Below are positions 1 through 63,634 of a stretch of 64,000 bases of DNA, one piece after another. The notes under the pieces are model-generated. The model ran no database searches and was not told the DNA's origin. It saw only the letters and a list, made by a program, of their open reading frames with translations. Source of the stretch: Gekko japonicus (lineage: Eukaryota); assembly GCF_001447785.1 (NCBI RefSeq), contig NW_015172604.1, positions 334,140 through 398,139 on the forward strand, in the 5' to 3' direction. Both the position numbers and the translations under genes were made by a program. Each line of letters starts with the position of its first letter. Position 1 is the stretch's first letter.

Positions 1-81
1 ACAGCTCCCACCATGGCTCTGCGTTTTTTCCTGTCCCACCAGCCCACTCCCTGCTCTTGCTCACTACGGAACCATCCTCAC

Positions 82-330
82 CTGTAATGCCATTCTGGGC
101 TCCGCTCCCATTCCCCCCAGCAGCAGCCGGCCTGCGGGCACCGGATGCAACACTGACCCCAGGCCCTGACTTCTTGGCATTCGCTGCTGTTGGCTTAGCC
201 TGTGCTCTGAAGGCGTCAGTGACTGCCGGCTTGCCCGGAGGGGCACCTCCCACGCCCTGGGCCTGCTGCTTCAACTTCTTTCTTTTCTTCTTCTTCTTCG
301 GCTGAGCATCGTCCTCCCCTGACCCAGGTC
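82..330 (-). CDS. SURF6: SURF6 coding exon 2 (Lys-rich nucleolar protein; gene continues left of the window)
   Basis: Acceptor cttccccAG at 332-331; reads (G)GPGSGEDDAQPKKKKKRKKLKQQ...QNGIT; donor GTGAGG at 81; phase matches the upstream exon. Confidence 0.8.
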
Positions 331-1268
331 CTGGGGAAGTGGGAAGGCAGAGAAGTGAGTTGCATTTCCTGCGAGGGAAACAATCTAAGCCTGTCTCTGG
401 CATGCCAGGAAGGACAGGACAGGGAGAATCTGCCTCCAGGACTAAAGGGACCCCCCAACAGCCCAGAAGACCTCCACCGATCGGGGTGGCCCTTTCCCTG
501 TGCCCTGAAAAGAAGACAGGAGACCAACTGGACCAGGCTGCTTAGACTACCCAAAACAGCCAAATGCCCAAGACAATTGTCTGTCGCTTGCTGTTTTTTT
601 GGAATTAAACTACAAACTATTTTTTGGCAACTAAAGAGAAAGAGTGGTATATACTTGCATTAAATGCAGAAATAAATGCCCCAAATTCTGGACAAATTAA
701 TTTACTATAATTTCAAAGAGTTTCACACCAACGAGAGTGGGAATTACCTGGAGGAGGAGTTTTCCTTAAATCTGCTTTCTGAGACAGGTTTTTTTAAATG
801 TGAAAGATATATATACTTATGTATTTCTATCAAATTATATTCTGCCCTCCCTGCGAGCGGGCTCAGGGCGGATCACAAACAAATTTTGAGCCACTCAGCT
901 CATCCCAATGAGCACACAATTCCTGTGAACCTCACCACGAGATGCTTTTCTTTAAAAAGAAGGGCAGCAAATAAGCCTATGAATGAATAAATATTCACTC
1001 AGGAAGAATTCAAGTGGCTAGCCCTCATGATCCTCGATGTCACAGCAGCTTCAGAATTCCACAAATCACCCAGTTTTGGAGCAACAGCTCTGTTTCCAGA
1101 GGGCACTGTGCAACTGTGTTTGCTGGAAATGAGCTTGAAGGCCAAAGAAATTCATTTGTCCCAAGTTGCAGTATAACCACTTGTGCCTAGAGGAGCTTAC
1201 AGCCTAAGAGGCAGCACATTTGGTAATACAACATCCATGAAGACCAATGTGAATCTCAGAAACTGTAC

Positions 1269-6560: not shown

Positions 6561-6743
6561 AGTCCCGTGGCACCTTTAAGACCATCAAAGGTTTATCCAA
6601 GGTATGAGCTTTCATTTGCCTGCACACTTTTTCAAATACAAATATCTTACCCCCCATTCCAATCTATTTGAAAAAGTGTGCCATGCACACAAAAGCTCAT
6701 ACCCTGATTAAACCTTTGCTGGTCTTAAAGGTGCCATGGGACT
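6561..6743. repeat. Inverted repeat, probably Penelope-derived
   Basis: Arms of ~75 bp (GGCACCTTTAAGACC...TTTTTCAAATA and its reverse complement); related fragments at ~1750, ~18640 and ~18960. Confidence 0.6.
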
Positions 6744-8435: not shown

Positions 8436-8823
8436 NNNNNNNNNNNNNNNNNNNNNNNNNNNNNNNNNNNNNNNNNNNNNNNNNNNNNNNNNNNNNNNNN
8501 NNNNNNNNNNNNNNNNNNNNNNNNNNNNNNNNNNNNNNNNNNNNNNNNNNNNNNNNNNNNNNNNNNNNNNNNNNNNNNNNNNNNNNNNNNNNNNNNNNNN
8601 NNNNNNNNNNNNNNNNNNNNNNNNNNNNNNNNNNNNNNNNNNNNNNNNNNNNNNNNNNNNNNNNNNNNNNNNNNNNNNNNNNNNNNNNNNNNNNNNNNNN
8701 NNNNNNNNNNNNNNNNNNNNNNNNNNNNNNNNNNNNNNNNNNNNNNNNNNNNNNNNNNNNNNNNNNNNNNNNNNNNNNNNNNNNNNNNNNNNNNNNNNNN
8801 NNNNNNNNNNNNNNNNNNNNNNN
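8436..8823. other. Assembly gap (other gaps at 4941-4997 and 61457-61482)
   Basis: Runs of N. Confidence 1.
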
Positions 8824-18490: not shown

Positions 18491-18679
18491 GGGCTTTTAT
18501 AGAGAGAAATAGGGACACCTCATACCTGCTTTCGTAATTATTTAAAAAAAATCCTTATAATATGATAGAGAAATCTCAACGGGGACAATTCCAGAAATAA
18601 AAATGCATCACAAAGTCTGACTCCAGACTGGGCCCCTTCAAGACCAACAAAGTTTAATCCCGGGTCTAACCTTTTGTGT

Positions 18680-18899
18680 TAGGGTTGCCAACTGCAGATT
18701 GAGAAATTCCTGGAGACTTGGGGGTGGAGCCTGATGAAAGCAGGGTTTGGGAAGGGGGAGGCCCCACAGTGGGGCAGAATGCCATAGAGTCCACCCTCCA
18801 GAGGAGCCATTTCCTCCAGGGGAAGTGATCTCTGTTTTCTGGAGACCATTTGTAATTCCAGGAGATCTCCAGGTCCCACCTGGAGGCTGGCAACCCTGG
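18680..18899. mobile_element. hAT-type MITE (TAGGGTTGCCA...TGGCAACCCT)
   Basis: TIRs and 8-bp TSD TTTTGTGT; related pieces at ~5640-5870 and ~30370-31210. Confidence 0.8.
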
Positions 18900-29459: not shown

Positions 29460-30110
29460 TCATGCTTAACAGTTCCTTATTTCTCATAGGCCACTAAGAA
29501 TGCAGAACATGGGCCAAGATCCTTGCAAGCAAGTCCTGCTACTGCAGCTACCGCTTTCTCCACACTTCTCGGTTTTGCCCTAGGCTGCCAGTTGCTGACT
29601 CCACTGACAGATTCTCCACTGGTTGTGAAGGTTAACCCTCCCACTAGATACAGCCATGCGAAGTGGGCGGCATCCATCAGCTCTCTCCTGTTGCTTCCAC
29701 TGTGGCCAAAACCAGGAGCAGGTGGACAGGTAGGATATCTGTCACCCACACAGGCACATGGCATCTTTCATCCCTTTAGGTCCCAGCAGACAGGTAGAAG
29801 CCTGGCTTCCCAGAAAGTGCCTATGCTAAAAAAACCAGTCAGACATGACATCCATACCAGCCCTGAAGAGCTGGGTGCTGGAGCAGCAGAGATTCATCTG
29901 GGATGCTGAGTCTGCTGATGACCATTCATCACCAGGATACCCTCCATCCATTAAAGGAGGACAAAACACGGGATTTGCCACTAGAGGATTTGTATCAGTG
30001 GACGGGAGGTAGTCAGGAGCCTCACCTACATTCAGCCCTGGGAACGTGGTAAAGCCCAGTGGTGTATGACCCCCCCCCCGACTCCCTGCAAAGAGAGAAG
30101 GCTTACTCAC

Positions 30111-30192
30111 CAGGTAATAATATACTGCATGTGCTCATTTCTCAAGGTCACTCTTGTCTGGCCTCCAATTGGCCCCCCTGGGACTGTGCTCT
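30111..30192 (-). CDS. SURF1: SURF1 exon 8
   Basis: [26 protein letters not shown](W). Confidence 0.96.
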
Positions 30193-31561
30193 CTATGGAT
30201 ACAGGAGGGAAACAGAAATGACTCGTAACTATACAGGAAAAGAAGACATGCATTTATTTGAGAAACTAGTAATAAGGCCTGTTGTGGAAATAAACACGAG
30301 CTCTAGAAAGAGACTTGGGTACTCAGCGTCAATATGCTGTACTGACCTCAGCATAGAATGATGACGGAGCCCACCACTTTCTTCAGGGGAACTGATCTCT
30401 GCCATCTGAAAAGCAGCTGTAGTTCTGAGTGATCTCCACTCCTCACCTGGAGATTGGCAGCAGTGGTTCCCCAGGAAGAAATGGCTGGTTTGGAGGGCAT
30501 TGTAGCTGTCTGAGGTCCCAACCCTCCTCAAACTCCACCCTCTCCAGGGTCCACCCCTCAAATCTCCAGGAGTTTCCCAACCTGGAGCTGGCAATCCTAT
30601 CTCCTTCCCAGCCAATCATCAACCTACCTTTATTTGCCCCTCTGACTTCGGCTTTCCATCTCTCCCCCCACCTGCAGCCTCTACCCTGTCGTAGGGGGGC
30701 CATCTCACCAGGGTATAAGGACACAGAGTCCACCATTTTCTCCAGGGGAACTGATCTCTGCCAACTGGAGAACAGTTGTAATTCTGAGTGATCTTCAGCC
30801 ACAACCTGGAGATTGGCAACAGTGGTTCCCCAGGAGAATAGCACAGTCTTTCTCCACAGTGGCTTACATCATTCTCCTCTCCCCCTTTTGATCTGCACAA
30901 CAACCCTGTGAAGCACATTAGGCTGAAAGTCTGTGACTGGTCCGAAATCACCCACTCAGCTTCCATGGCAAGAACCTGGGTCTGCTCTGAAGTGCTAACT
31001 TCTATGCCACACTGCCTGTGGTATTGCCTCATATCACAACTGAACTACAGACAATAGATCTCTCTCGCCCCCTGGAGAAAATAGCTGCTTTGAAGGGTGG
31101 ACTCTATGGCATTGCATTCAGCTGAGGCCTCTCCCCTCCCCAAACCCTGGCTTCCGTAGACCACCACAAAATCTCCAGGAATTTCCCAACCTGGAGCAGG
31201 CAACCCTAGTCAGGACTGGCCCCAATGAGTTCCCTACAAAGGCCTGGAAAGGGCCTCCTGTCTTTGCCTTTTTACTGACACAACCAAGCCCAGTTGCCTA
31301 GTAACAGTCACTGAGGGAAAAGTTAGTCCCACGGGAGCCAAGCAGGAGAAGTGTCTTTGTTAGGAGAGACAGCCGTTTTGACAGTTTATTCTGTGAGGGA
31401 AGAGTGTCCAGGCTAAGAGTGGGCAGGGGAGAGGAGCAGACCCAGCACCCAGCCAATGGCACACGAGTAATCTTGAAGGGCAATTGATGGGCCAATGGCT
31501 GATGGAGTGCACAGCACAGCCAATTCTCCAATGCATTACTGGAATTATACACACACACACA

Positions 31562-41980: not shown

Positions 41981-42330
41981 GCCATCTTCTCTGGAAGATG
42001 CCAAAAAATCCCCTATGAACTTAGGCAATGCCCCTGCAGTCAGTCAGGGTGCTATCGAATCCGTTTCTCATGTCCTTTTAAATTGTCCATTTTATACTAA
42101 GATTTGAGGAAAATTTCTGGACACCCTTCTTTTTACATGGCGTGGCCCTTCCTGAGAATATCAAGGTCCAGTTGCTACTCTCTGGGCAAAACGCTTCTAT
42201 AACTTTTAATGTTGCTTGTTTTCTTCAATCTGTAATTCGAACCAGGGAAACTATTAATTGATCAGTTCTTTTTTTGTTGGCTGTTTGACCTTTGATGTAT
42301 TCCTAAATTTTAATGTTATCTTATCTCTTA

Positions 42331-42684
42331 AAGGTAAAGGTAAAGGTTCCCTTGCTCGAAAGCCAGTCGAATCCGACTCTAGGGTTGCGGTGCTCATCTC
42401 TGTTTCAAAGCCGAAGAGCCAGCGCTGTCCGAAGACGTCTCCGTGGTCATGTGGCCGGCATGACTAAACACCAAGGCGCACGGAACGCTGTTACCTTCCC
42501 ACCGAAGCGGTACCTATTTATCTACTTGCAATTTCTTGCTTTCGAACTGCTAGGTTGGCAGGAGCTGGAACTAGAGACGGGAGCTCACTCCGTCATGCGG
42601 CACACTCAGTTCTCAAACTGCTGAACTACCGACCTTCCACAGCCTGCAGTTTAGCGTCTTAACCACTTGAGCCACCGCAGCTCC
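42331..42684 (-). mobile_element. Sauria-type SINE, full length
   Basis: Same family; TSD TCTTATCTCTTA. Confidence 0.88.
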
Positions 42685-48984: not shown

Positions 48985-49066
48985 CTTTTCGCAGCCATAT
49001 CAAGTTGGAGATAGCTTTAGAGTGGGGGCATCCAAAGAATGTCCTTCTGTCCAAGCAGTTTGGTAG
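48985..49066 (-). CDS. SURF1: SURF1 exon 2
   Basis: LPNCLDRRTFFGCPHSKAISNLIWLRK; acceptor ttttgcttttAG, donor G|GTGAGC; phase 0 to phase 1 fits both neighbours. Confidence 0.8.
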
Positions 49067-49180
49067 CTAAAAGCAAAATAGAGAAACCTCCTGTATTACC
49101 ACCCTTCATTTTAAACATAAGTTAATTCAGATCTCCTTTTAGGAAACATGAGAAACAGCTTCCCGGTGCAAAAGCTATAG

Positions 49181-49341
49181 TAAAGGTAAAGGTAAAGGTT
49201 CCCTTGCTCGAAAGCCAGTCGAATCCGACTCTAGGGTTGCGGTGCTCATCTCCATTTCAAAGCCGAAGAGCCAGCGCTGTCCGAAGACGTTTCCGTGGTC
49301 ATGTGGCCGGCATGACTAAACACCAAGGCGCACGGAACGTT
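49181..49341 (-). mobile_element. Sauria-type SINE, 3' half
   Basis: ACCTTT tail and 3' body only. Confidence 0.8.
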
Positions 49342-49642
49342 GTTGTTCTATACTGGAATCCAAATGCCACTGTCACAAAATTCACCTGGATCTCTCAGTT
49401 GCATTTTCCAACATGGCATCAAATAAGACAGATGCTTGGCTGACATGCAGAACCACAATACTAGACTATGGTGACAAAGAGGGTGGGAAGCAGGAGGTCC
49501 TGTCTTGGAAGCTGTGCCACACACTGCAAGTAAGCAAGTCCCCATGTCACATCAAGGACAGTGAGCCATGTGACAGCACCCTGGCCCAGGCCTAAATAGG
49601 GTGGACATGTAGCTACTTTCAAAAGGCCCAAACAGGGTTAGG

Positions 49643-50155
49643 TTCAGTGATTTCCTTCTATTTTTAACACAGGCAACATTTCTACAATGGTCCCGTTCAC
49701 ATGAGGGGATTTGGGCCAGTAGCGGGACGGTTCGGGGGCGGAGCAAATGGCCGCGATCACACCACAACATCTGGGAAGCGTAGTGCTTCCGTCCCCGAAC
49801 TGGCCCATCCACGCGATAAACCGCTCCAAATTGGAACCACCTACCAAGGTGGTTCATCTCAATGGTGTGCTGCAAACTGGGAGTCTGATCGCCGGCGCAT
49901 CCTTGCGCCGGCGCGTCCCCGGCTCCTAGGCGAACTGCGCATGCTCTGACATGCGCAGTTCGGCTGGCTCGCCGTCCGATCTGTGTTTTCTCCCCGGCGT
50001 CTGATCATGCCGGGGAGAAAGGCGGCGCGGCCAGGGGATCTGCGCCGTTTCAACTTTGGCGCGGCTTTTAAAAGCCACGCTTTTTGGCTGCTTTTCCTCT
50101 GCCGTGTGGCAGGGGCCAAAGTTGCCTATGTTAAAAATAGAAGAAAATCACTGAA
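49643..50155. mobile_element. MITE-like element with ~35-bp inverted termini and a CpG-rich core
   Basis: TTCAGTGATTTCCTTCTATTTTTAACACAGGCAAC ... GTTGCCTATGTTAAAAATAGAAGAAAATCACTGAA. Confidence 0.7.
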
Positions 50156-51321
50156 TTATTTAGTTCAGTTTCTTTTTATAGATAACTATTATTTTATAGA
50201 TAACAACATTTAAATCTCAAGCTCCATAAAAGCAACATCTATTGTGGATCTTTCAGATCTATTAAAGGTAAAACAACGAGAGATGATCTACTAGGGCAGC
50301 AGTCATGCTGGTATATCTAAATGAGGGGGTGACTGAGGGAGAAAAACCAGTACCACGAGCATTCATGTGACATAGAAAGTGTGTCCCCCCCCCAAAGTTG
50401 GTTAAATTCATACTGCCACGATCAGCATAATTCCTCATGTACCTGGGTTCTTCAAAAAGGTGTTGGTGTATATAGCCTCTCTTCAACTTAATTGTGTTAT
50501 TGTTGTAAATAAAGAGCCAACAACCTATGACATCATCAGCCAGGAAAACATCATTGAGAATTCATCAGATTAGGATCAGGAACATCCGGGCTACAATCTT
50601 CACTCTGCCATGACGGTCACTAGACAACTGTAGGCCAGTGTCTTTCTCTACCTCACAGGGTTCTTCTGAGGATTAAATGGGGAGGGGGAACGATAGCGTC
50701 ACGTACACTGCCCTGAGCTACCAGGAGGAAAGACATGATGAAATGCCTAAAATTTACTCACAGGGTGGGGGGGTGGAACGTGATGTCAAGTTGCAGCCAA
50801 TTTACGGCAAGTCTATAGGGTTTTCAAGGCAAGAGACGTTCAGAGGTGGTCTCCCATCCAAATACGAACTAGGGTCAACCCTGTTTAACTTCCAAGATCT
50901 GACAAGATCAGGCTAGCCTGGGCAATCATAGGATAAAGCAAACTTCCAGTTTCACAAAAAAAAACGGCGCGGGGGGGGGGGGGGGGGGGGGGGAGGCCAG
51001 CAGCAAGCCCAAATCAGCTACTAGTTTTCTAAAAGCCACAGAAAAGGTAGGCCCAGATGGAAGACCAAAGCCCACTCCCTCCCACCCAACTGCTGACCCT
51101 GCAAAACCTGGCCCACTGCCTCCAGCTGCTCTCTACTGGAAAGGGACTGTGTCGGCCCTAGTCCTACAGTTTGGTGTAGTGGTTAAGTGCATGGACTCTA
51201 GAGCCAGATTGGTTAAGTGGTTAAAGTGCACAGACTCTAATCTGGGAGAACCAGGTTTGATTCCCCACTCCTCCACTCACAGCTGCTGGATTACCTTGGG
51301 CAAGCCATAGTCCTGTCCAAG

Positions 51322-51517
51322 GCTCCCTCCAAGCTGCGGAGTCTGGTGAGCAAAAATTCTACCTTGTGAGCTACCAGCATTAAAGTGGTGAGCGAGCGAT
51401 TTGGCTGCTGCATAAACTAGTTCACCTTGGAGCCGTCCTTCCTGAGCTGAGACAAAAATGTGTGAGCTGGAGGCTAAAAAACTGTGAGCTAGCTCACGCT
51501 AACTCAGCTTAGAGGGA
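51322..51517. mobile_element. hAT MITE family A (partial) within a tRNA-derived SINE
   Basis: Same internal sequence and right TIR as the other family A copies. Confidence 0.7.
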
Positions 51518-51752
51518 AGGGAAAGGAGTTTGTAAACCGCTCTGAGACTCTGAGTGAAGGGTGGGGTATAAATCCAATCTGTTCTCTCTCTCCCCAGCTG
51601 ATTGACAGGCATAAATTACACAAGTCAAACTTCCCTTGACATAAAGATGGGGAGAGGTAAGAAATGTAATGTCTCTTAAGGGCACAACAGCAGAGTTACC
51701 AAAAAAGTGAGCAAACTCCCTCTCTCAGCCCCAGTCCTTTTTTGTAAAAAGG

Positions 51753-52770
51753 CCAATCCAATCCAAATACTTTTACTGGCATAAAAAGAAAAAAAGGTAG
51801 AACACGGCCAATTTACAGAGAATTTCAATGATAAAAACCATCAAGCATCACATAGAAAAGCTAGACTTTTGTTCCCTGATTGTTATGGCAGCCAAGAGGT
51901 ACCTTGCAACTGAACTTGTAATGTGGGAACATCGGTCAGATAGTAAGAGAGATACTAACTTCGCCTCGGCTCAGATAGACTGTGAAAGTTAGACACAATA
52001 GGTCTAATTATAAAGTCCCACACTTCCCTATAAAAATCACAATGAAGTAAAACATGGGTTACTGTTTCAAGGTGCCTTCCTTTACATGAACAAAGTCTTT
52101 CTTGATAGGGCGTGTTTGCAAACCTCCCAGACAATACCACTGAGGGTAAAACATTGAGTATTGCTAACATAAAAGAGCAGCGTAACTGGGGAGAGGTAAT
52201 CTGGGAAAGGTAAGCAGCAGGCAGTCCATATTCTGGAAAGATACCGAATGCTTAAGGAGAGCAAGTTCTGTGTTCAAGAGAACAGATAGTCTTTTTCTCA
52301 ATATCTAGAATCCACTGTTTCAAAATTCTAAATGTCTGCGTTTCACTTAACATGCAGAGGTTGTCCAAAGAGACACCTATAGAATGTATTTTCTTCTGGA
52401 TCCAACAATACCAGTTGGAAACAAAAGAATCAAAAAGCATCATATGGATACAGCTAGCAGGTTCTGCCCTGAAGTGTAGGCGTAGCCAACACTTTGACGT
52501 TAATAGCCATGCCCTAGTCCCAATCAGATGCATTCCAGTCTCTAAGCACATTGTAGCATAGCTAGCACAGTTGGGGAACCCCCAAAATGCGGCATAAGAA
52601 CGTTGCCTGGATTTGCTCAAGCTGGGTATTAAAGGCGCTAACCCAAATGGGGATCCCGTATAAAAGCTGAGAAATTGTTTTGGCATTCAAGACACAAATG
52701 GCAGCTGGGACAAATTGATTGCCCTTCTTATAAAAGAAACTAACCACCACAGATGAACTGCACCTTGCTA
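51753..52770 (-). mobile_element. Non-LTR retrotransposon 3' fragment (RTE-X-like)
   Basis: Degenerate ORF with a C-terminal CSC...ETVTHVLLHC zinc knuckle; (TTGGA)n tail. Confidence 0.7.
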
Positions 52771-53118: not shown

Positions 53119-53251
53119 CACCTATAGAATGTATTTTCTTCTGGATCCAACAATACCAGTTGGAAACAAAAGAATCAAAAAGCATCATATGGATACAGCT
53201 AGCAGGTTCTGCCCTGAAGTGTAGGCGTAGCCAACACTTTGACGTTAATAG
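53119..53251 (+). repeat. 133-bp copy of 52374-52506
   Basis: Appears identical by eye: CACCTATAGAATG...GACGTTAATAG. Confidence 0.92.
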
Positions 53252-53252
53252 G

Positions 53253-53523
53253 GTGCCGCATGACGGAGTGAGCTCCCGTCTCTAGTTCCAGCTCCTGCCA
53301 ACCTAGCAGTTCGAAAGGAAGAAGTTGCAAGTAGATAAATAGGTACCACTTCGGTGGGAAGGTCACAGCGTTCCGTGCGCCTCGGTGTTTAGTCATGCCG
53401 GCCACACGACCACGGAAACGTCTTCGGACAGCGCTGGCTCTTCGGCTTGGAAACGGAGATGAGCACCGCAACCCTAGAGTCGGACTCGACTGGCTTTCGA
53501 GCAAGGGAACCTTTACCTTTAAA
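53253..53523 (+). mobile_element. Sauria-type SINE body lacking its tRNA head
   Basis: Starts at GTGCCGCATGAC and ends ACCTTTACCTTT. Confidence 0.85.
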
Positions 53524-53892
53524 AGGTAAATGGAGACACTCATGGAGCAAGAAAAGCCCATAAGCAGTAAAACAGCCATAATGGCTCCACGATCCAGAGC
53601 AGTCTATCCCCAGAAACAGGACGGGGTCCCCGCCAGGGCGGCTACCTCCGCCTCAGACCGTTCCTGGGCAGGGCCCCGAGCCCTCTTTTCTCCTCCAGGA
53701 GCTCCTCGGCTAGCGCGGTTGCCAAGCGCTCCAGGTGGGCCCTGGAAATCTCCCCGTGGGAGAGGCGAGAGATCGGCCCCACTGAAAAAAGAGGCCTGGG
53801 AAGGGGAGTCCAGCGCCGCCCCCGCCTCCCAAGCACAGGCGCCCTGCGAGCGGGGAGAAGCCGTATCCGGGGCCGCCCCTCCGGCCTCCTAC

Positions 53893-53964
53893 CTGCCCTC
53901 TGCCCCAAACGCGGCCCCACAGACGACCATCGCCTAGCAACCGCAGACAGCCCGCCATTCTCAT
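53893..53964 (-). CDS. SURF1: SURF1 exon 1, copy A (probable original)
   Basis: MRMAGCLRLLGDGRLWGRVWGRGQ|GTAGG; Arg-rich, like a mitochondrial targeting peptide; phase 0; in a CpG island. Confidence 0.75.
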
Positions 53965-54609
53965 TGCTTCCGCCGGCGGCCGGATGTGACCCGGAGGCAC
54001 TTTCTGGGAAGGGCTGGACTCGTGGGGAAAGGAAAAGGCGGGAGTCGCCACCGCCGACGGCGCACTCATGTTGGGGTGCCGCTCTACCCTCAAGATCTCG
54101 ATGGTACTTTGCACACAAACGCGGACACTCTCGGGGTCCCCGCCAGGGCGGCTACCTCCGGCTCAGACCGTTCCTGGGCAGGGAGGAGGCTGGGGAAAGG
54201 GGCCGTGGAGCTCGGCAGGGGACGGGATGCCTCCCCCGAGCCCAAAACTTGGTTGGTCTTAAAGGCGCCACTTCGGATTTGGACTGTTCACCTTTTCATC
54301 GACATTCTTGGGGGGGGGGCAGAGGAGGGATAGAGGACCCCCACATCACCGAGAGTGGCGTGAAAAGGCCACACGCACGCATACTTTACTTTTCTCCTCC
54401 AGGAGCTCCTCGGCTAGCGCGGTTGCCAAGCGCTCCAGGTGGGCCCTGGAAATCTCCCCGTGGGAGAGGCGAGAGATCGGCCCCACTGGAGAAAACGGCT
54501 GCCTCGGAGGGTGGGCTCTGCAGGGGCCGAGGCCTGGGAAGGGGACCCCCCCCCTCGAGGCAGTCCAGCGCCGCCCCCGCCTCCCGGGACCGCCCCTCCG
54601 GCCTCCTAC

Positions 54610-54681
54610 CTGCCCTCTGCCCCAAACGCGGCCCCACAGACGACCATCGCCTAGCAACCGCAGACAGCCCGCCATTCTCAT
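54610..54681 (-). CDS. SURF1: SURF1 exon 1, duplicate copy B
   Basis: Same coding sequence and donor as copy A, 717 nt upstream. Confidence 0.55.
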
Positions 54682-54744
54682 TGCTTCCGCCGGCGGCCGG
54701 ATGTGACCCGGAGGCACTTTCTGGGAAGGGCTGGACTCGTGGGG

Positions 54745-54839
54745 GTCATGCGGCACACTCAGGTCTTGAACTGCTGAACTACCGACCTTCCACAGCCTGC
54801 AGCTCAGCGTCTTCACCGCTTGAGCCACCGCAGCTCCTT
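54745..54839 (-). mobile_element. Sauria-type SINE tRNA-like head only
   Basis: A box TGGCTCAAGCGG and B box GTTCAAGACC on the minus strand; ends at GTGCCGCATGAC. Confidence 0.85.
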
Positions 54840-55102
54840 CATACTTTACGTTACTGTCTGGTTTATCTTTGGTTCCAGGGAGCGGAAGTGAGGAATGCGT
54901 GAGGGGGGCGCGTTTCCTGTTCCCGACGGGCCGCGAAGGGGGCGGGGCAGCCCAGAGAGACCCGAGGGGGCCGGACACCGGAAGTGAGGTTGCGGCGCGC
55001 GGGGGCCGGCCGAGGCGCCCGGATTGGCTCCTCGCTCCATGCGCGCGCGCCCGTAGCCACGCCCCCTGCCGGAGCGGGCCCAGAAGCGCGCGGAGCCGGG
55101 CC

Positions 55103-55183
55103 ATGAGCGGGCCGTCCGCGGAGGCGCTGGAGGGGTTCCTGGCGCAGCATCCGTCCCTGCGCGTCCTCCCGCCGGGGAACCGG
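55103..55183 (+). CDS. SURF2: SURF2 exon 1
   Basis: MSGPSAEALEGFLAQHPSLRVLPPGNR|gtgagg (FL..HPSLR motif). Confidence 0.9.
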
Positions 55184-60852: not shown

Positions 60853-61535
60853 TAATAAATTAATTTACAGCATTTTAGTCTCTTTCTCCAGAAGCAGATT
60901 CAAGGTGGGCTACAATAGTAATATGATTTAAAAACCCACAAAGACCAACAAGCGTATATAATTCACCACTCAACGGCAGGGTCAAAAGCCCTCCAGAATA
61001 ATTCCATCTTGGGCAACTTCTGAAATGGCCATGGAGGCTGTTTGGAGAAGGAAACTTCCCCAGAGGCATTTGATTCCAGGCAAGGCACTCCAAGATAAAA
61101 TTCTCCCTCCTCAGTCTTTACAGTTCTAAGCTGACACCTGAACTCAGCTCCTAGAATGTCCATCCAGGAAAGTGCTGCTGGGGAATATTGAGGCGACAGA
61201 AACACCCTGCTGCTGGGTAATTTGGCCACCCCAAGAGCTGGGGCAAAGGCCACAGCCCCTTCTGAAGGCAGGTTAAAGGGGACAGCAGTGGTGCATTTCT
61301 GATGTGTGCGCCCCGCCCAGGCCACAGGAGCTGGGCTTGGAAGTGGGGGCAGTGAAGAAGCCATTCCCAGCTTCAGCACAGTTTCTGGGTTGGATGGGAA
61401 GGATTCCTTAGCCCCTTGTTCTCAGGCCCTAGAGGCCATGTCTGCTCTTGGGGGGGNNNNNNNNNNNNNNNNNNNNNNNNNNCTCCTTGTCATGTCGTGG
61501 CAACGGCTTTGGGGACGAGCTGATGTCCTCTCTGA

Positions 61536-63259: not shown

Positions 63260-63634
63260 CAGGGGTCATTTCGTAGAAAAAGAGGTACAGGAGATCATTA
63301 GCATAACTTATTTGCGTATGCCATGCCCCCTGACATCAGTGGAAGTGTGTCAGAAGGCAACATCCACCACTCAGGCTCCACTGGACTGTTTTGGATTGCT
63401 AGCTATTGTGGGGGGGGGACGTGCAGATCTGTCCTCACAAAGGAGGGAGAGCTTGTACCTGAATAAAACTTGGTCTTAAAGGTGTCACTGGACTGTTTTG
63501 GATTGTTAGCTAATGGGGGGGGGGATGTGCAGATCTGTCCTCGCAGAGGAGGGAGAGCTTGTACCTGAATAAACTTGGTCTTAAAGGTGCCCCAGAGCTC
63601 TGCTCCTGTGCGCTCCCGCAGGAAATGACCCCTG
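63260..63634. mobile_element. hAT-type MITE with an internal ~110-bp tandem duplication
   Basis: TIR CAGGGGTCATTTC/GAAATGACCCCTG; exact TSD CATGTAGG. Confidence 0.88.

What the first reader, a model, noticed from the sequence alone, without database searches (positions are those of the whole stretch)
54380..54849. TSD-flanked chimeric cassette: SINE Pol III head fused to a second SURF1 exon 1, inside the SURF1/SURF2 bidirectional promoter
Seen: the 10-mer CATACTTTAC occurs at 54380-54389 and again at 54840-54849. Between them, read on the minus strand, lie a Sauria-SINE tRNA-like head with A and B boxes (54839-54745) joined directly to a sense copy of the SURF1 5' region (54744-54390, matching 54027-53686). 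The copy contains the whole coding exon 1 and its GT donor and ends in a short A-rich stretch (GGAGAAAA). The two coding exons look identical, while the intronic parts differ by three indels. Established: LINE reverse transcriptases can switch templates and produce small-RNA/mRNA chimeras flanked by TSDs (U6-L1 type). Inference: either such a chimera, made from SURF1 pre-mRNA plus SINE RNA, landed in the gene's own promoter, or a SINE inserted here and its body was later replaced by local DNA. Either way SURF1 would have two functional-looking first exons, one with a Pol III/TFIIIC element right upstream and lying closer to the SURF2-side ETS sites.
Basis: partly seen in the sequence, partly recalled or inferred. 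Interest (0 to 1): 0.8.

Follow-up and report, generated by a model that had tools for sequence, protein, structure and literature searches.

The report
Split SINE with duplicated SURF1 exon
A lizard's SURF1/SURF2 shared promoter holds a real second copy of SURF1 exon 1 fused to the front 93 bases of a SINE, but it is one piece of a larger, recent patchwork of local copies that differs between animals, and it is not a clean RNA-derived chimera.

Summary
CATACTTTAC occurs only at 54380-54389 and 54840-54849. Between the two copies, on the minus strand, lie Sauria-SINE positions 1-93 joined bluntly to a 355-nt copy of the SURF1 5' leader, exon 1 and part of intron 1. The two coding exons are identical.

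The U6/L1-type reading is only partly supported. Four findings argue against it:
- The homology to the original resumes outside the repeat. The 64 nt that follow copy A reappear 150 nt beyond copy B (X', 54132-54243).
- The missing SINE body (positions 79-350, 12-15 nt overlap with the head) lies 1.2 kb away on the other strand. It abuts a 133-nt, 100% copy of DNA from 745 nt further on.
- That 133-nt copy is antisense to SURF1, so a DNA template is the likelier source.
- The cassette has neither the SINE/Bov-B 3' end nor poly(A) on which a reverse transcriptase would start.

Contigs from other animals lack X' and carry the B-type intron at the A position. One DNA run holds the promoter/SINE-head junction at half depth.

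My best reading (about 0.45) is one aberrant SINE integration resolved by local DNA-templated repair, with later changes. Which exon 1 is used cannot be told.

The parts
54840..54849 (.). T, promoter-side copy of the direct repeat (minus strand GTAAAGTATG)
   Evidence: only two copies in the window. It directly precedes the SINE 5' end.
54745..54839 (-). S1: Sauria-SINE head, SINE positions 1-93 at 54837-54745, preceded by AA. A-box-like motif at 54827-54816, B-box-like motif at 54772-54762.
   Evidence: 6/93 differences from the local consensus. A DNA contig of run X1 covers 54812-54980 without differences at about half depth (record 6).
54389..54744 (-). Copy B of the SURF1 5' region. U (54744-54584) is the leader, exon 1 and 26 nt of intron. 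Mb (54583-54489) is the middle. R (54488-54389) is the last part. Exon-1 coding is 54681-54610.
   Evidence: The junction with SINE position 93 is blunt. X1 record 5 covers 54393-54545 exactly.
54380..54389 (.). T, second copy of the direct repeat. Its G at 54389 is also the last base shared with copy A.
54244..54379 (-). W2, unique promoter-side DNA between copy B and X'. It is transcribed in other animals.
   Evidence: X3 record 12 and X4 record 19 join 54389-54244 to 54131-53893. Part of W2 resembles an old repeat.
54132..54243 (-). X': a templated insertion that copies X (10 nt plus 52 nt, 51/52 identical) with 50 extra nt in between.
   Evidence: Contigs of X3 and X4 lack exactly this stretch and have 4 other letters in its place.
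54028..54131 (-). W1, unique DNA just upstream of copy A.
   Evidence: Its similarity to the SINE head is not significant (p about 0.11).
53685..54027 (-). Copy A of the SURF1 5' region. U is 54027-53867, Ma is 53866-53785, R is 53784-53685. Exon-1 coding is 53964-53893.
   Evidence: RNA-type contigs stop aligning exactly at 53893, the last exon base.
53622..53684 (-). X, intron-1 sequence that directly follows copy A. It is the source of X'.
53250..53521 (+). S2: Sauria-SINE body and (ACCTTT)n tail, SINE positions 79-350, on the strand opposite to the head. It shares GTGCCGCATGAC with the head's end.
   Evidence: (inverted pair I1). 9/272 differences from the consensus.
53119..53251 (+). a': a 133-nt, 100% identical direct copy of 52374-52506, abutting the truncated SINE body (2 nt shared).
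   Evidence: X1 record 3 follows the reference to 53118 and then departs.
52374..52506 (+). a: the source of a', in SURF1 intron 1.
48985..49066 (-). SURF1 exon 2 (acceptor ttttag, donor gtgagc).
   Evidence: read directly. In frame with exon 1.
55103..55183 (+). Likely SURF2 exon 1 coding part (27 codons, GT donor).
   Evidence: The gene is confirmed by Pfam SURF2 on later exons. Exon 1 itself is assigned by position and reading frame only.

Best explanation
This is the scar of an aberrant Sauria-SINE integration, made by the Bov-B LINE machinery, in the SURF1/SURF2 promoter and first intron.

One SINE RNA was copied in two pieces, as in twin priming: positions 350 to 79 from a nick at about 53522, and positions 93 to 1 ending at the staggered cut at T (54840-54849). 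The free ends were not joined to each other. Each was instead extended on nearby DNA, by microhomology-poor template switching of the SDSA/MMBIR/theta-type, before ligation.

That produced [SINE 1-93][copy of the SURF1 leader, exon 1 and intron part] between the two T copies, and [copy of 52374-52506][SINE 79-350] 1.2 kb away on the other strand.

Further local templated changes followed or accompanied this: the X' insertion and the reshaped middle of copy A. They now differ between animals.

Shown: the structures, their near-identity, the two typical SINE junctions, and the differences between animals. Inferred: that the two halves come from one event, and that the local copies were templated by DNA.

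Consequence: this haplotype has two identical first exons. Copy B sits where the original exon used to lie relative to the SURF2-side promoter. Spliced mRNAs from either copy would be the same.
For: - The head (1-93, minus strand) and the body (79-350, plus strand) are complementary halves with a 12-15 nt overlap, 1.2 kb apart. They are two of only four partial SINE pieces in 64 kb. A chance fit of the break points is about 9%.
- Both outer SINE junctions look like normal integration ends. SINE position 1 sits next to a 9-10 nt repeat that starts T-A. The (ACCTTT)n tail sits next to T|AAAAGG. Intact copies in the window look the same, and PMC13295347 describes this pattern.
- Each half is fused at its broken end to a near-perfect copy of unique DNA from 0.7 kb away.
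- a' has plus-strand sense, antisense to SURF1 and 2.6 kb upstream of the SURF2 start. A DNA template is therefore the simplest source.
- X' continues copy B's homology outside the repeat and is bounded exactly.
- The local copies are 99-100% identical, while the SINE halves differ 3-6% from their consensus. Both halves share an AT>GC bias (11:3 against 30:37 in the other copies, p=0.037).
- Other animals differ. X' is absent, and the B-type middle is joined to X-Y, in the contigs of X3. X4 shows the X' absence directly and the second point only by inference. The V-T-SINE junction has half depth in X1.
Against: - In classical twin priming the two halves are adjacent and lie inside one target-site duplication. 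Here they are 1.2 kb apart and in the opposite relative order, so extra steps must be assumed.
- The second cassette (53119-53521) has no flanking repeat of 6 nt or more.
- The overlap of the halves is too short to prove a common origin, and the divergence of head and body does not differ significantly (p=0.22).
- The SINE-head/U junction itself (54744/54745) was not among the contig rows shown, so it is not independently confirmed.
- If X' and Ma arose later, several events are needed, which weakens a one-event story.
Confidence: 0.45

Rival explanations
1. First reader's model. A LINE reverse transcriptase started on SURF1 pre-mRNA at the A-rich stretch in intron 1, ran to the RNA's 5' end, switched to a SINE RNA at position 93 and ran to its 5' end. 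The product is a U6/L1-type chimera flanked by a target-site duplication. X', a' and the SINE body are unrelated events.
For: - A precise 9-10 nt repeat lies at both ends of the cassette.
- The SINE 5' end is intact.
- Both parts are in the sense orientation.
- The local part is unspliced, with a 5' end 63 nt upstream of the ATG, which could be a transcription start.
- Switching into an internal point of a small RNA is known for U5/U3 chimeras, and RTE-clade LINEs also make chimeras (PMC4476161).
Against: - There is no poly(A) tail and no Bov-B/SINE 3' tail at the point where reverse transcription would have to start.
- The sequence that follows the copied part in the source (X) reappears 150 nt beyond the repeat. 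A chance origin of that is not credible.
- The complementary SINE half lies nearby, fused to an antisense local copy.
- A Pol III read-through RNA would stop at the TTTT at 54495, before R.
Confidence: 0.2
2. Two or more steps without retrotransposition chemistry at the rearrangement. One ordinary full-length SINE inserted long ago. Later replication-based template switching (FoSTeS/MMBIR) or break repair in this GC-rich promoter broke it and scattered local copies (a', B, X'). T is then simply the start of a duplicated unit, or a filled-in staggered break.
For: - Three direct local copies each come from 0.5-0.75 kb back on the same strand.
- The junctions are blunt or share 1-2 nt.
- The copies are far younger than the SINE's own divergence.
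- X' is exactly missing in the contigs of other animals, so the changes need not all have arisen at once.
- A tandem duplication of T through R, followed by replacement of W2-W1 by the SINE head, would also give the observed order.
Against: - The head begins exactly at SINE position 1 beside T, and the tail sits at a different, typical target. A single old insertion cannot give both junctions.
- It must be chance that the duplication boundary lies only 10 nt from the SINE insertion point, and that T has the family's usual length and T-A start.
Confidence: 0.25
3. Assembly artefact. Two haplotypes of one exon-1 region, or mis-polished long reads, were stitched in tandem, and the animal has a single exon 1.
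For: - 100% identical segments.
- In X1 the exon-1 contig has about single-copy depth (58, against a baseline of 57-78), and contigs run across both homology boundaries without a break.
- In X3 the B-type middle runs into X-Y, as a single-copy locus would.
Against: - There is no gap nearby. The nearest N runs are at 8436-8823 and 61457-61482.
- The copies have non-homologous flanks and a precise short repeat, unlike haplotype duplications.
- The V-T-SINE-head junction is present in an independent DNA run (X1 record 6).
- Contigs of X3 and X4 begin or end exactly 30 letters (k-1) beyond T, as expected at a branch where R leads both to T and to X. This last point is an inference, because those letters were not shown.
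Confidence: 0.1

Closest known systems
U6/L1 and other snRNA/LINE or snRNA/mRNA chimeric retrocopies (template switching during target-primed reverse transcription; PMC4476161)
   Same: A small Pol III RNA with an intact 5' end lies at the 5' side and a second sequence at the 3' side, in the same orientation. The whole is flanked by a short target-site duplication. The small RNA is 3'-truncated, as in U5/U3 chimeras.
   Different: The 3' part is not a LINE 3' end or a polyadenylated mRNA. It is unspliced local DNA from 360 nt away, ending inside an intron. Its continuation lies outside the duplication, and the rest of the SINE is nearby and inverted.
Twin priming (5'-inverted L1/Alu insertions)
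   Same: One retroelement is present as a 5' part and a 3' part in opposite orientation, with a short overlap at the break (12-15 nt here).
   Different: The halves are not adjacent and not within one duplication. They are 1.2 kb apart, in the reverse relative order, and each is fused to a local copy.
Locally templated insertions and complex rearrangements from replication-based or polymerase-theta repair (FoSTeS/MMBIR/TMEJ). Named from general knowledge, not tested against a paper here.
   Same: Several short copies of sequence from within 1 kb are inserted at blunt or 1-2 nt microhomology junctions. One of them (X') replaces 4 nt. The structure differs between individuals.
   Different: Two of the insertions carry halves of a retroelement with normal-looking integration ends and a SINE-type target duplication.
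Ordinary Sauria SINE insertion mobilised by Bov-B LINE (PMC13295347)
   Same: The 5' end is intact, the tail is (ACCTTT)n, the TSD is about 10 nt and starts T-A, and the sequence is 93-97% identical to the family.
   Different: There is no contiguous element. The T site lacks the upstream T stretch of the Tn-TA signature, and the SINE body is replaced there by host sequence.

Membership tests
U6/L1-type template-switch chimera | Flanked by a target-site duplication | tested here: met
   A 10-nt (or 9 + 1) exact repeat lies at both ends, unique in the window.
U6/L1-type template-switch chimera | The 5' part is a small RNA with its own 5' end, in the same orientation as the 3' part | tested here: met
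   SINE positions 1-93 in sense, joined to the SURF1 5' region in sense.
U6/L1-type template-switch chimera | The 3' part ends in the LINE 3' end or a poly(A) tail, where reverse transcription starts (PMC4476161) | tested here: not met
   The cassette ends at GGAGAAAAG inside intron 1. That stretch is genomic, because copy A has the same letters. There is no (ACCTTT)n and no poly(A).
U6/L1-type template-switch chimera | The insert is self-contained, with no donor sequence outside the duplication | tested here: not met
   X' (54132-54243) continues the donor 150 nt beyond T.
Twin-priming insertion | 5' and 3' parts of one element in opposite orientation, with a small overlap or deletion at the break | tested here: met
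   1-93 on the minus strand and 79-350 on the plus strand, with GTGCCGCATGAC shared.
Twin-priming insertion | The two parts are adjacent and enclosed by one target-site duplication | tested here: not met
   1.2 kb of host DNA lies between them. T flanks only the head cassette, and the body cassette has no repeat of 6 nt or more.
Sauria SINE (Bov-B partner) | tRNA-related head with A and B boxes, and a 3' end with (ACCTTT)n | tested here: met
   Consensus of the copies in the window. Box-like motifs. Tail as in PMC13295347, Table 4. ARAGORN and Rfam give no tRNA call, so 'tRNA-related' rests on the boxes only.
Sauria SINE (Bov-B partner) | Tn-TA insertion signature at the target | tested here: inconclusive
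   T starts (G)T-A, but no T stretch lies about 10 nt upstream. This is a single site.
Functional alternative first exon of SURF1 | Transcripts start at copy B and splice from 54610 to 49066 | not testable with these tools
   The exons are identical over 161 nt. RNA raw reads had a depth of about 1. Contigs show only that RNA crosses T-W2-W1 into exon 1 A.

The most novel reading that the evidence does not exclude
The locus preserves, in a natural population, the full outcome of one failed RTE-clade (Bov-B/Sauria SINE) target-primed integration. Two nicks more than 1 kb apart each primed on the same SINE RNA, and both cDNA ends were rescued by DNA-templated copying of nearby sequence. The event duplicated a gene's first exon inside a bidirectional promoter. 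The alleles still differing between animals would then record the steps.
Probability: 0.3. Interest if true: 0.6.

Novelty: new variant of a known kind. Interest (0 to 1): 0.45.

Why it matters
The locus shows a route by which a SINE integration can duplicate a first exon and its proximal promoter without a processed RNA intermediate. It also warns that a tidy TSD-flanked 'chimera' can be one panel of a larger repair patchwork.

Because the pieces are 99-100% identical and differ between animals, long reads could reconstruct the order of events. That would bear on how RTE-clade integrations are resolved, which is much less studied than for L1.

The functional stakes are probably small. Both exons encode the same 24 residues with the same donor, so the mature mRNAs would be the same. 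What could change is the promoter spacing to the SURF2-side ETS-like sites (ACTTCCG at about 54885 and 54985), and possibly Pol III or TFIIIC occupancy.

Tried and rejected
- W1 as a decayed second SINE head, which would have made the unit a tandem duplication that included the SINE. The local alignment was no better than shuffles (p about 0.11).
- A target-site duplication round the second cassette (53119-53521). No shared word of 6 nt or more. A 6-of-7 match (TAGATGG/TAAATGG) seen by eye is too weak and is not at the junction.
- A simple inversion with one break in the SINE. It would put both exon-1 copies antisense to the rest of SURF1 before the inversion, and it does not place T next to the tail. 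Rejected by reasoning.
- A Pol III read-through transcript from the SINE head as the source of the cassette. A TTTT at 54495 lies before R.
- tRNA and Rfam calls for the head: none.
- A word search with the 321-residue open frame across the cassette found nothing. This says nothing, because such frames are not genes.
- Raw RNA reads (X21) were too thin at exon 1, with a depth of about 1.
Exons were checked one by one by reference.

Full report
**Observation**

CATACTTTAC occurs only at 54380-54389 and 54840-54849 in the window. Chance would give 0.09, and no shuffle gave two matches.

Read on the minus strand, the first copy is followed by AA and then by positions 1-93 of a ~350-nt SINE (54837-54745). 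The window holds four full-length copies of this SINE and four partial pieces. The family ends in (ACCTTT)n, and its intact copies here have 11-14 nt target duplications that begin T-A. Both features are described for Sauria SINEs mobilised by Bov-B LINEs (PMC13295347).

The head has A-box-like and B-box-like motifs. Neither ARAGORN nor Rfam calls it a tRNA.

At 54745/54744 the SINE stops, and a copy of 54027-53685 begins without shared letters. I divide this copy into three parts:
- U, 161 nt: 63 nt of leader, 72 nt of exon-1 coding sequence and 26 nt of intron. There is one mismatch, in the intron.
- M, a middle part with three indels. I call it Ma in copy A and Mb in copy B.
- R, 100 nt with no mismatch.

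Both coding exons and both donors are identical. SURF1 lies on the minus strand (Pfam on the exon at 30110-30253; exon 2 at 49066-48985). SURF2 lies on the plus strand.

Three further facts change the picture.

1. In the original, R is followed directly by X (53684-53622). Beyond copy B, the repeat T and 136 nt of unique DNA (W2) come first. Then X appears again as X' (54243-54132). It is 10 nt plus 52 nt at 51/52 identity, with 50 extra nt in between. So donor sequence lies outside the supposed target duplication.

2. The rest of the SINE, positions 79-350 with its tail, lies at 53250-53521 on the plus strand. It is inverted relative to the head and shares GTGCCGCATGAC with the head's end. 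An earlier first-stage note of this scan on the same stretch (s1-821745) pointed to the split SINE, and I verified it.

3. The broken end of that body abuts a 133-nt, 100% identical copy (53119-53251) of 52374-52506.

So each SINE half is fused at its break to a copy of unique DNA from about 0.7 kb away. The second copy has plus-strand sense. That makes it antisense to SURF1 and places it well upstream of the SURF2 start, so SURF1 RNA cannot have been its template.

**Evidence from other animals (the single read-laying run)**

Run X1 is deep DNA from another animal. It lacks 49175-49347 and 49689-50120.
- One X1 contig covers 54812-54980 (SINE head, T, promoter) without differences, at about half the usual depth.
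- Another covers R plus Mb exactly.
- A third follows the reference to 53118 and then departs.

Runs X3 and X4 come from two other studies and are RNA by the tool's guess.
- Each holds a contig that joins 54389-54244 to 54131-53893 with four other letters in place of X'. The alignment stops at the last base of exon 1. The X4 contig is 1852 nt long, so I take it for spliced mRNA. That is an inference, because the remaining pieces were not listed.
- Both contigs carry exactly 30 further letters (k-1) beyond T. This fits a branch where R leads both to T and to X, and so fits the presence of the R|T junction. The letters themselves were not shown.
- An X3 contig runs from exon 1 through Mb and R straight into X and Y. 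In that animal the copy at the A position therefore has the B-type middle. An X4 contig probably does the same.
- Mb also matches an old repeat at 18786-18895 where Ma has a gap. Mb is therefore the older state, and the reference's copy A is the altered one.

The head/U junction itself was not among the rows shown. Raw RNA reads were too thin to use.

**Interpretation**

The cassette is real and looks like an integration product at both ends. It fails two defining features of U6/L1-type chimeras:
- Reverse transcription in those chimeras starts on a LINE 3' end or a poly(A) tail (PMC4476161). Here the 3' end is an internal intron site with genomic GAGAAAAG.
- The insert is not self-contained, because X' lies outside it.

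A Pol III read-through RNA is also unlikely, since a TTTT at 54495 precedes R.

Twin priming explains the inverted halves with a short overlap. It does not explain their separation or their order.

My best reading (0.45) is one aberrant Sauria-SINE integration whose two cDNA ends were each extended on nearby DNA before joining, with X' and Ma arising in or after the event.

The main rival (0.25) is an old SINE later broken up by replication-based template switching.

Weak support for a shared history of the two halves:
- The break points fit, where chance would give about 9%.
- Both halves show an AT>GC bias (p=0.037).

The local copies (99-100% identical) are much younger than the SINE's own 3-6% distance from its consensus.

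**Function**

Copy B sits about 140 nt from the SURF2-side ETS-like sites. Copy A is pushed about 860 nt away. The mRNAs from either exon would be identical, and the data cannot say which is used. RNA does cross T-W2-W1 into exon 1 A in other animals.

**Limits**

- No lizard genomes other than this window were available.

Noticed in passing
window 49175-49347 and 49689-50120: A 5'-truncated Sauria-SINE piece (SINE positions 193-356, 97.6% identical to the full-length copy at 42329-42684) just upstream of SURF1 exon 2, and a further 432-nt stretch, are both skipped by a deep DNA contig of another animal (X1 record 1, depth 57). These look like insertions, or deletions, that differ between animals in intron 1.
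   Followed up: partly
window 51167-51590: A different, very abundant repeat with depths up to 10^7 in all runs. It shows many variant joints round 51185-51238, which suggests a variable internal stretch of about 45 nt in that family.
   Followed up: no
window 53512-53530: The SINE tail and its flank form a near-palindrome (CCTTTACCTTTAAAAGGTAAATGG). The target beside the tail resembles the reverse complement of the tail itself.
   Followed up: no
window 18614-18895, also 6567-6736 and 63470-63507: An old dispersed repeat, about 70-85% identical, shares sequence with R/Mb and with part of W2. The SURF1 leader and first intron therefore sit in old transposon debris.
   Followed up: partly
window 53785-53866 against 54489-54583: Copy A's middle carries a 35-nt stretch (TACGGC...GTGCTT) with no match elsewhere in the window. 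A DNA contig of X1 covers it with two differences. Its source is unknown.
   Followed up: partly
window 54184-54233: The 50 extra nt inside X' have no match elsewhere in the window. An X1 DNA contig nevertheless covers them at full depth with two differences, so a source copy may exist elsewhere or on another haplotype.
   Followed up: no
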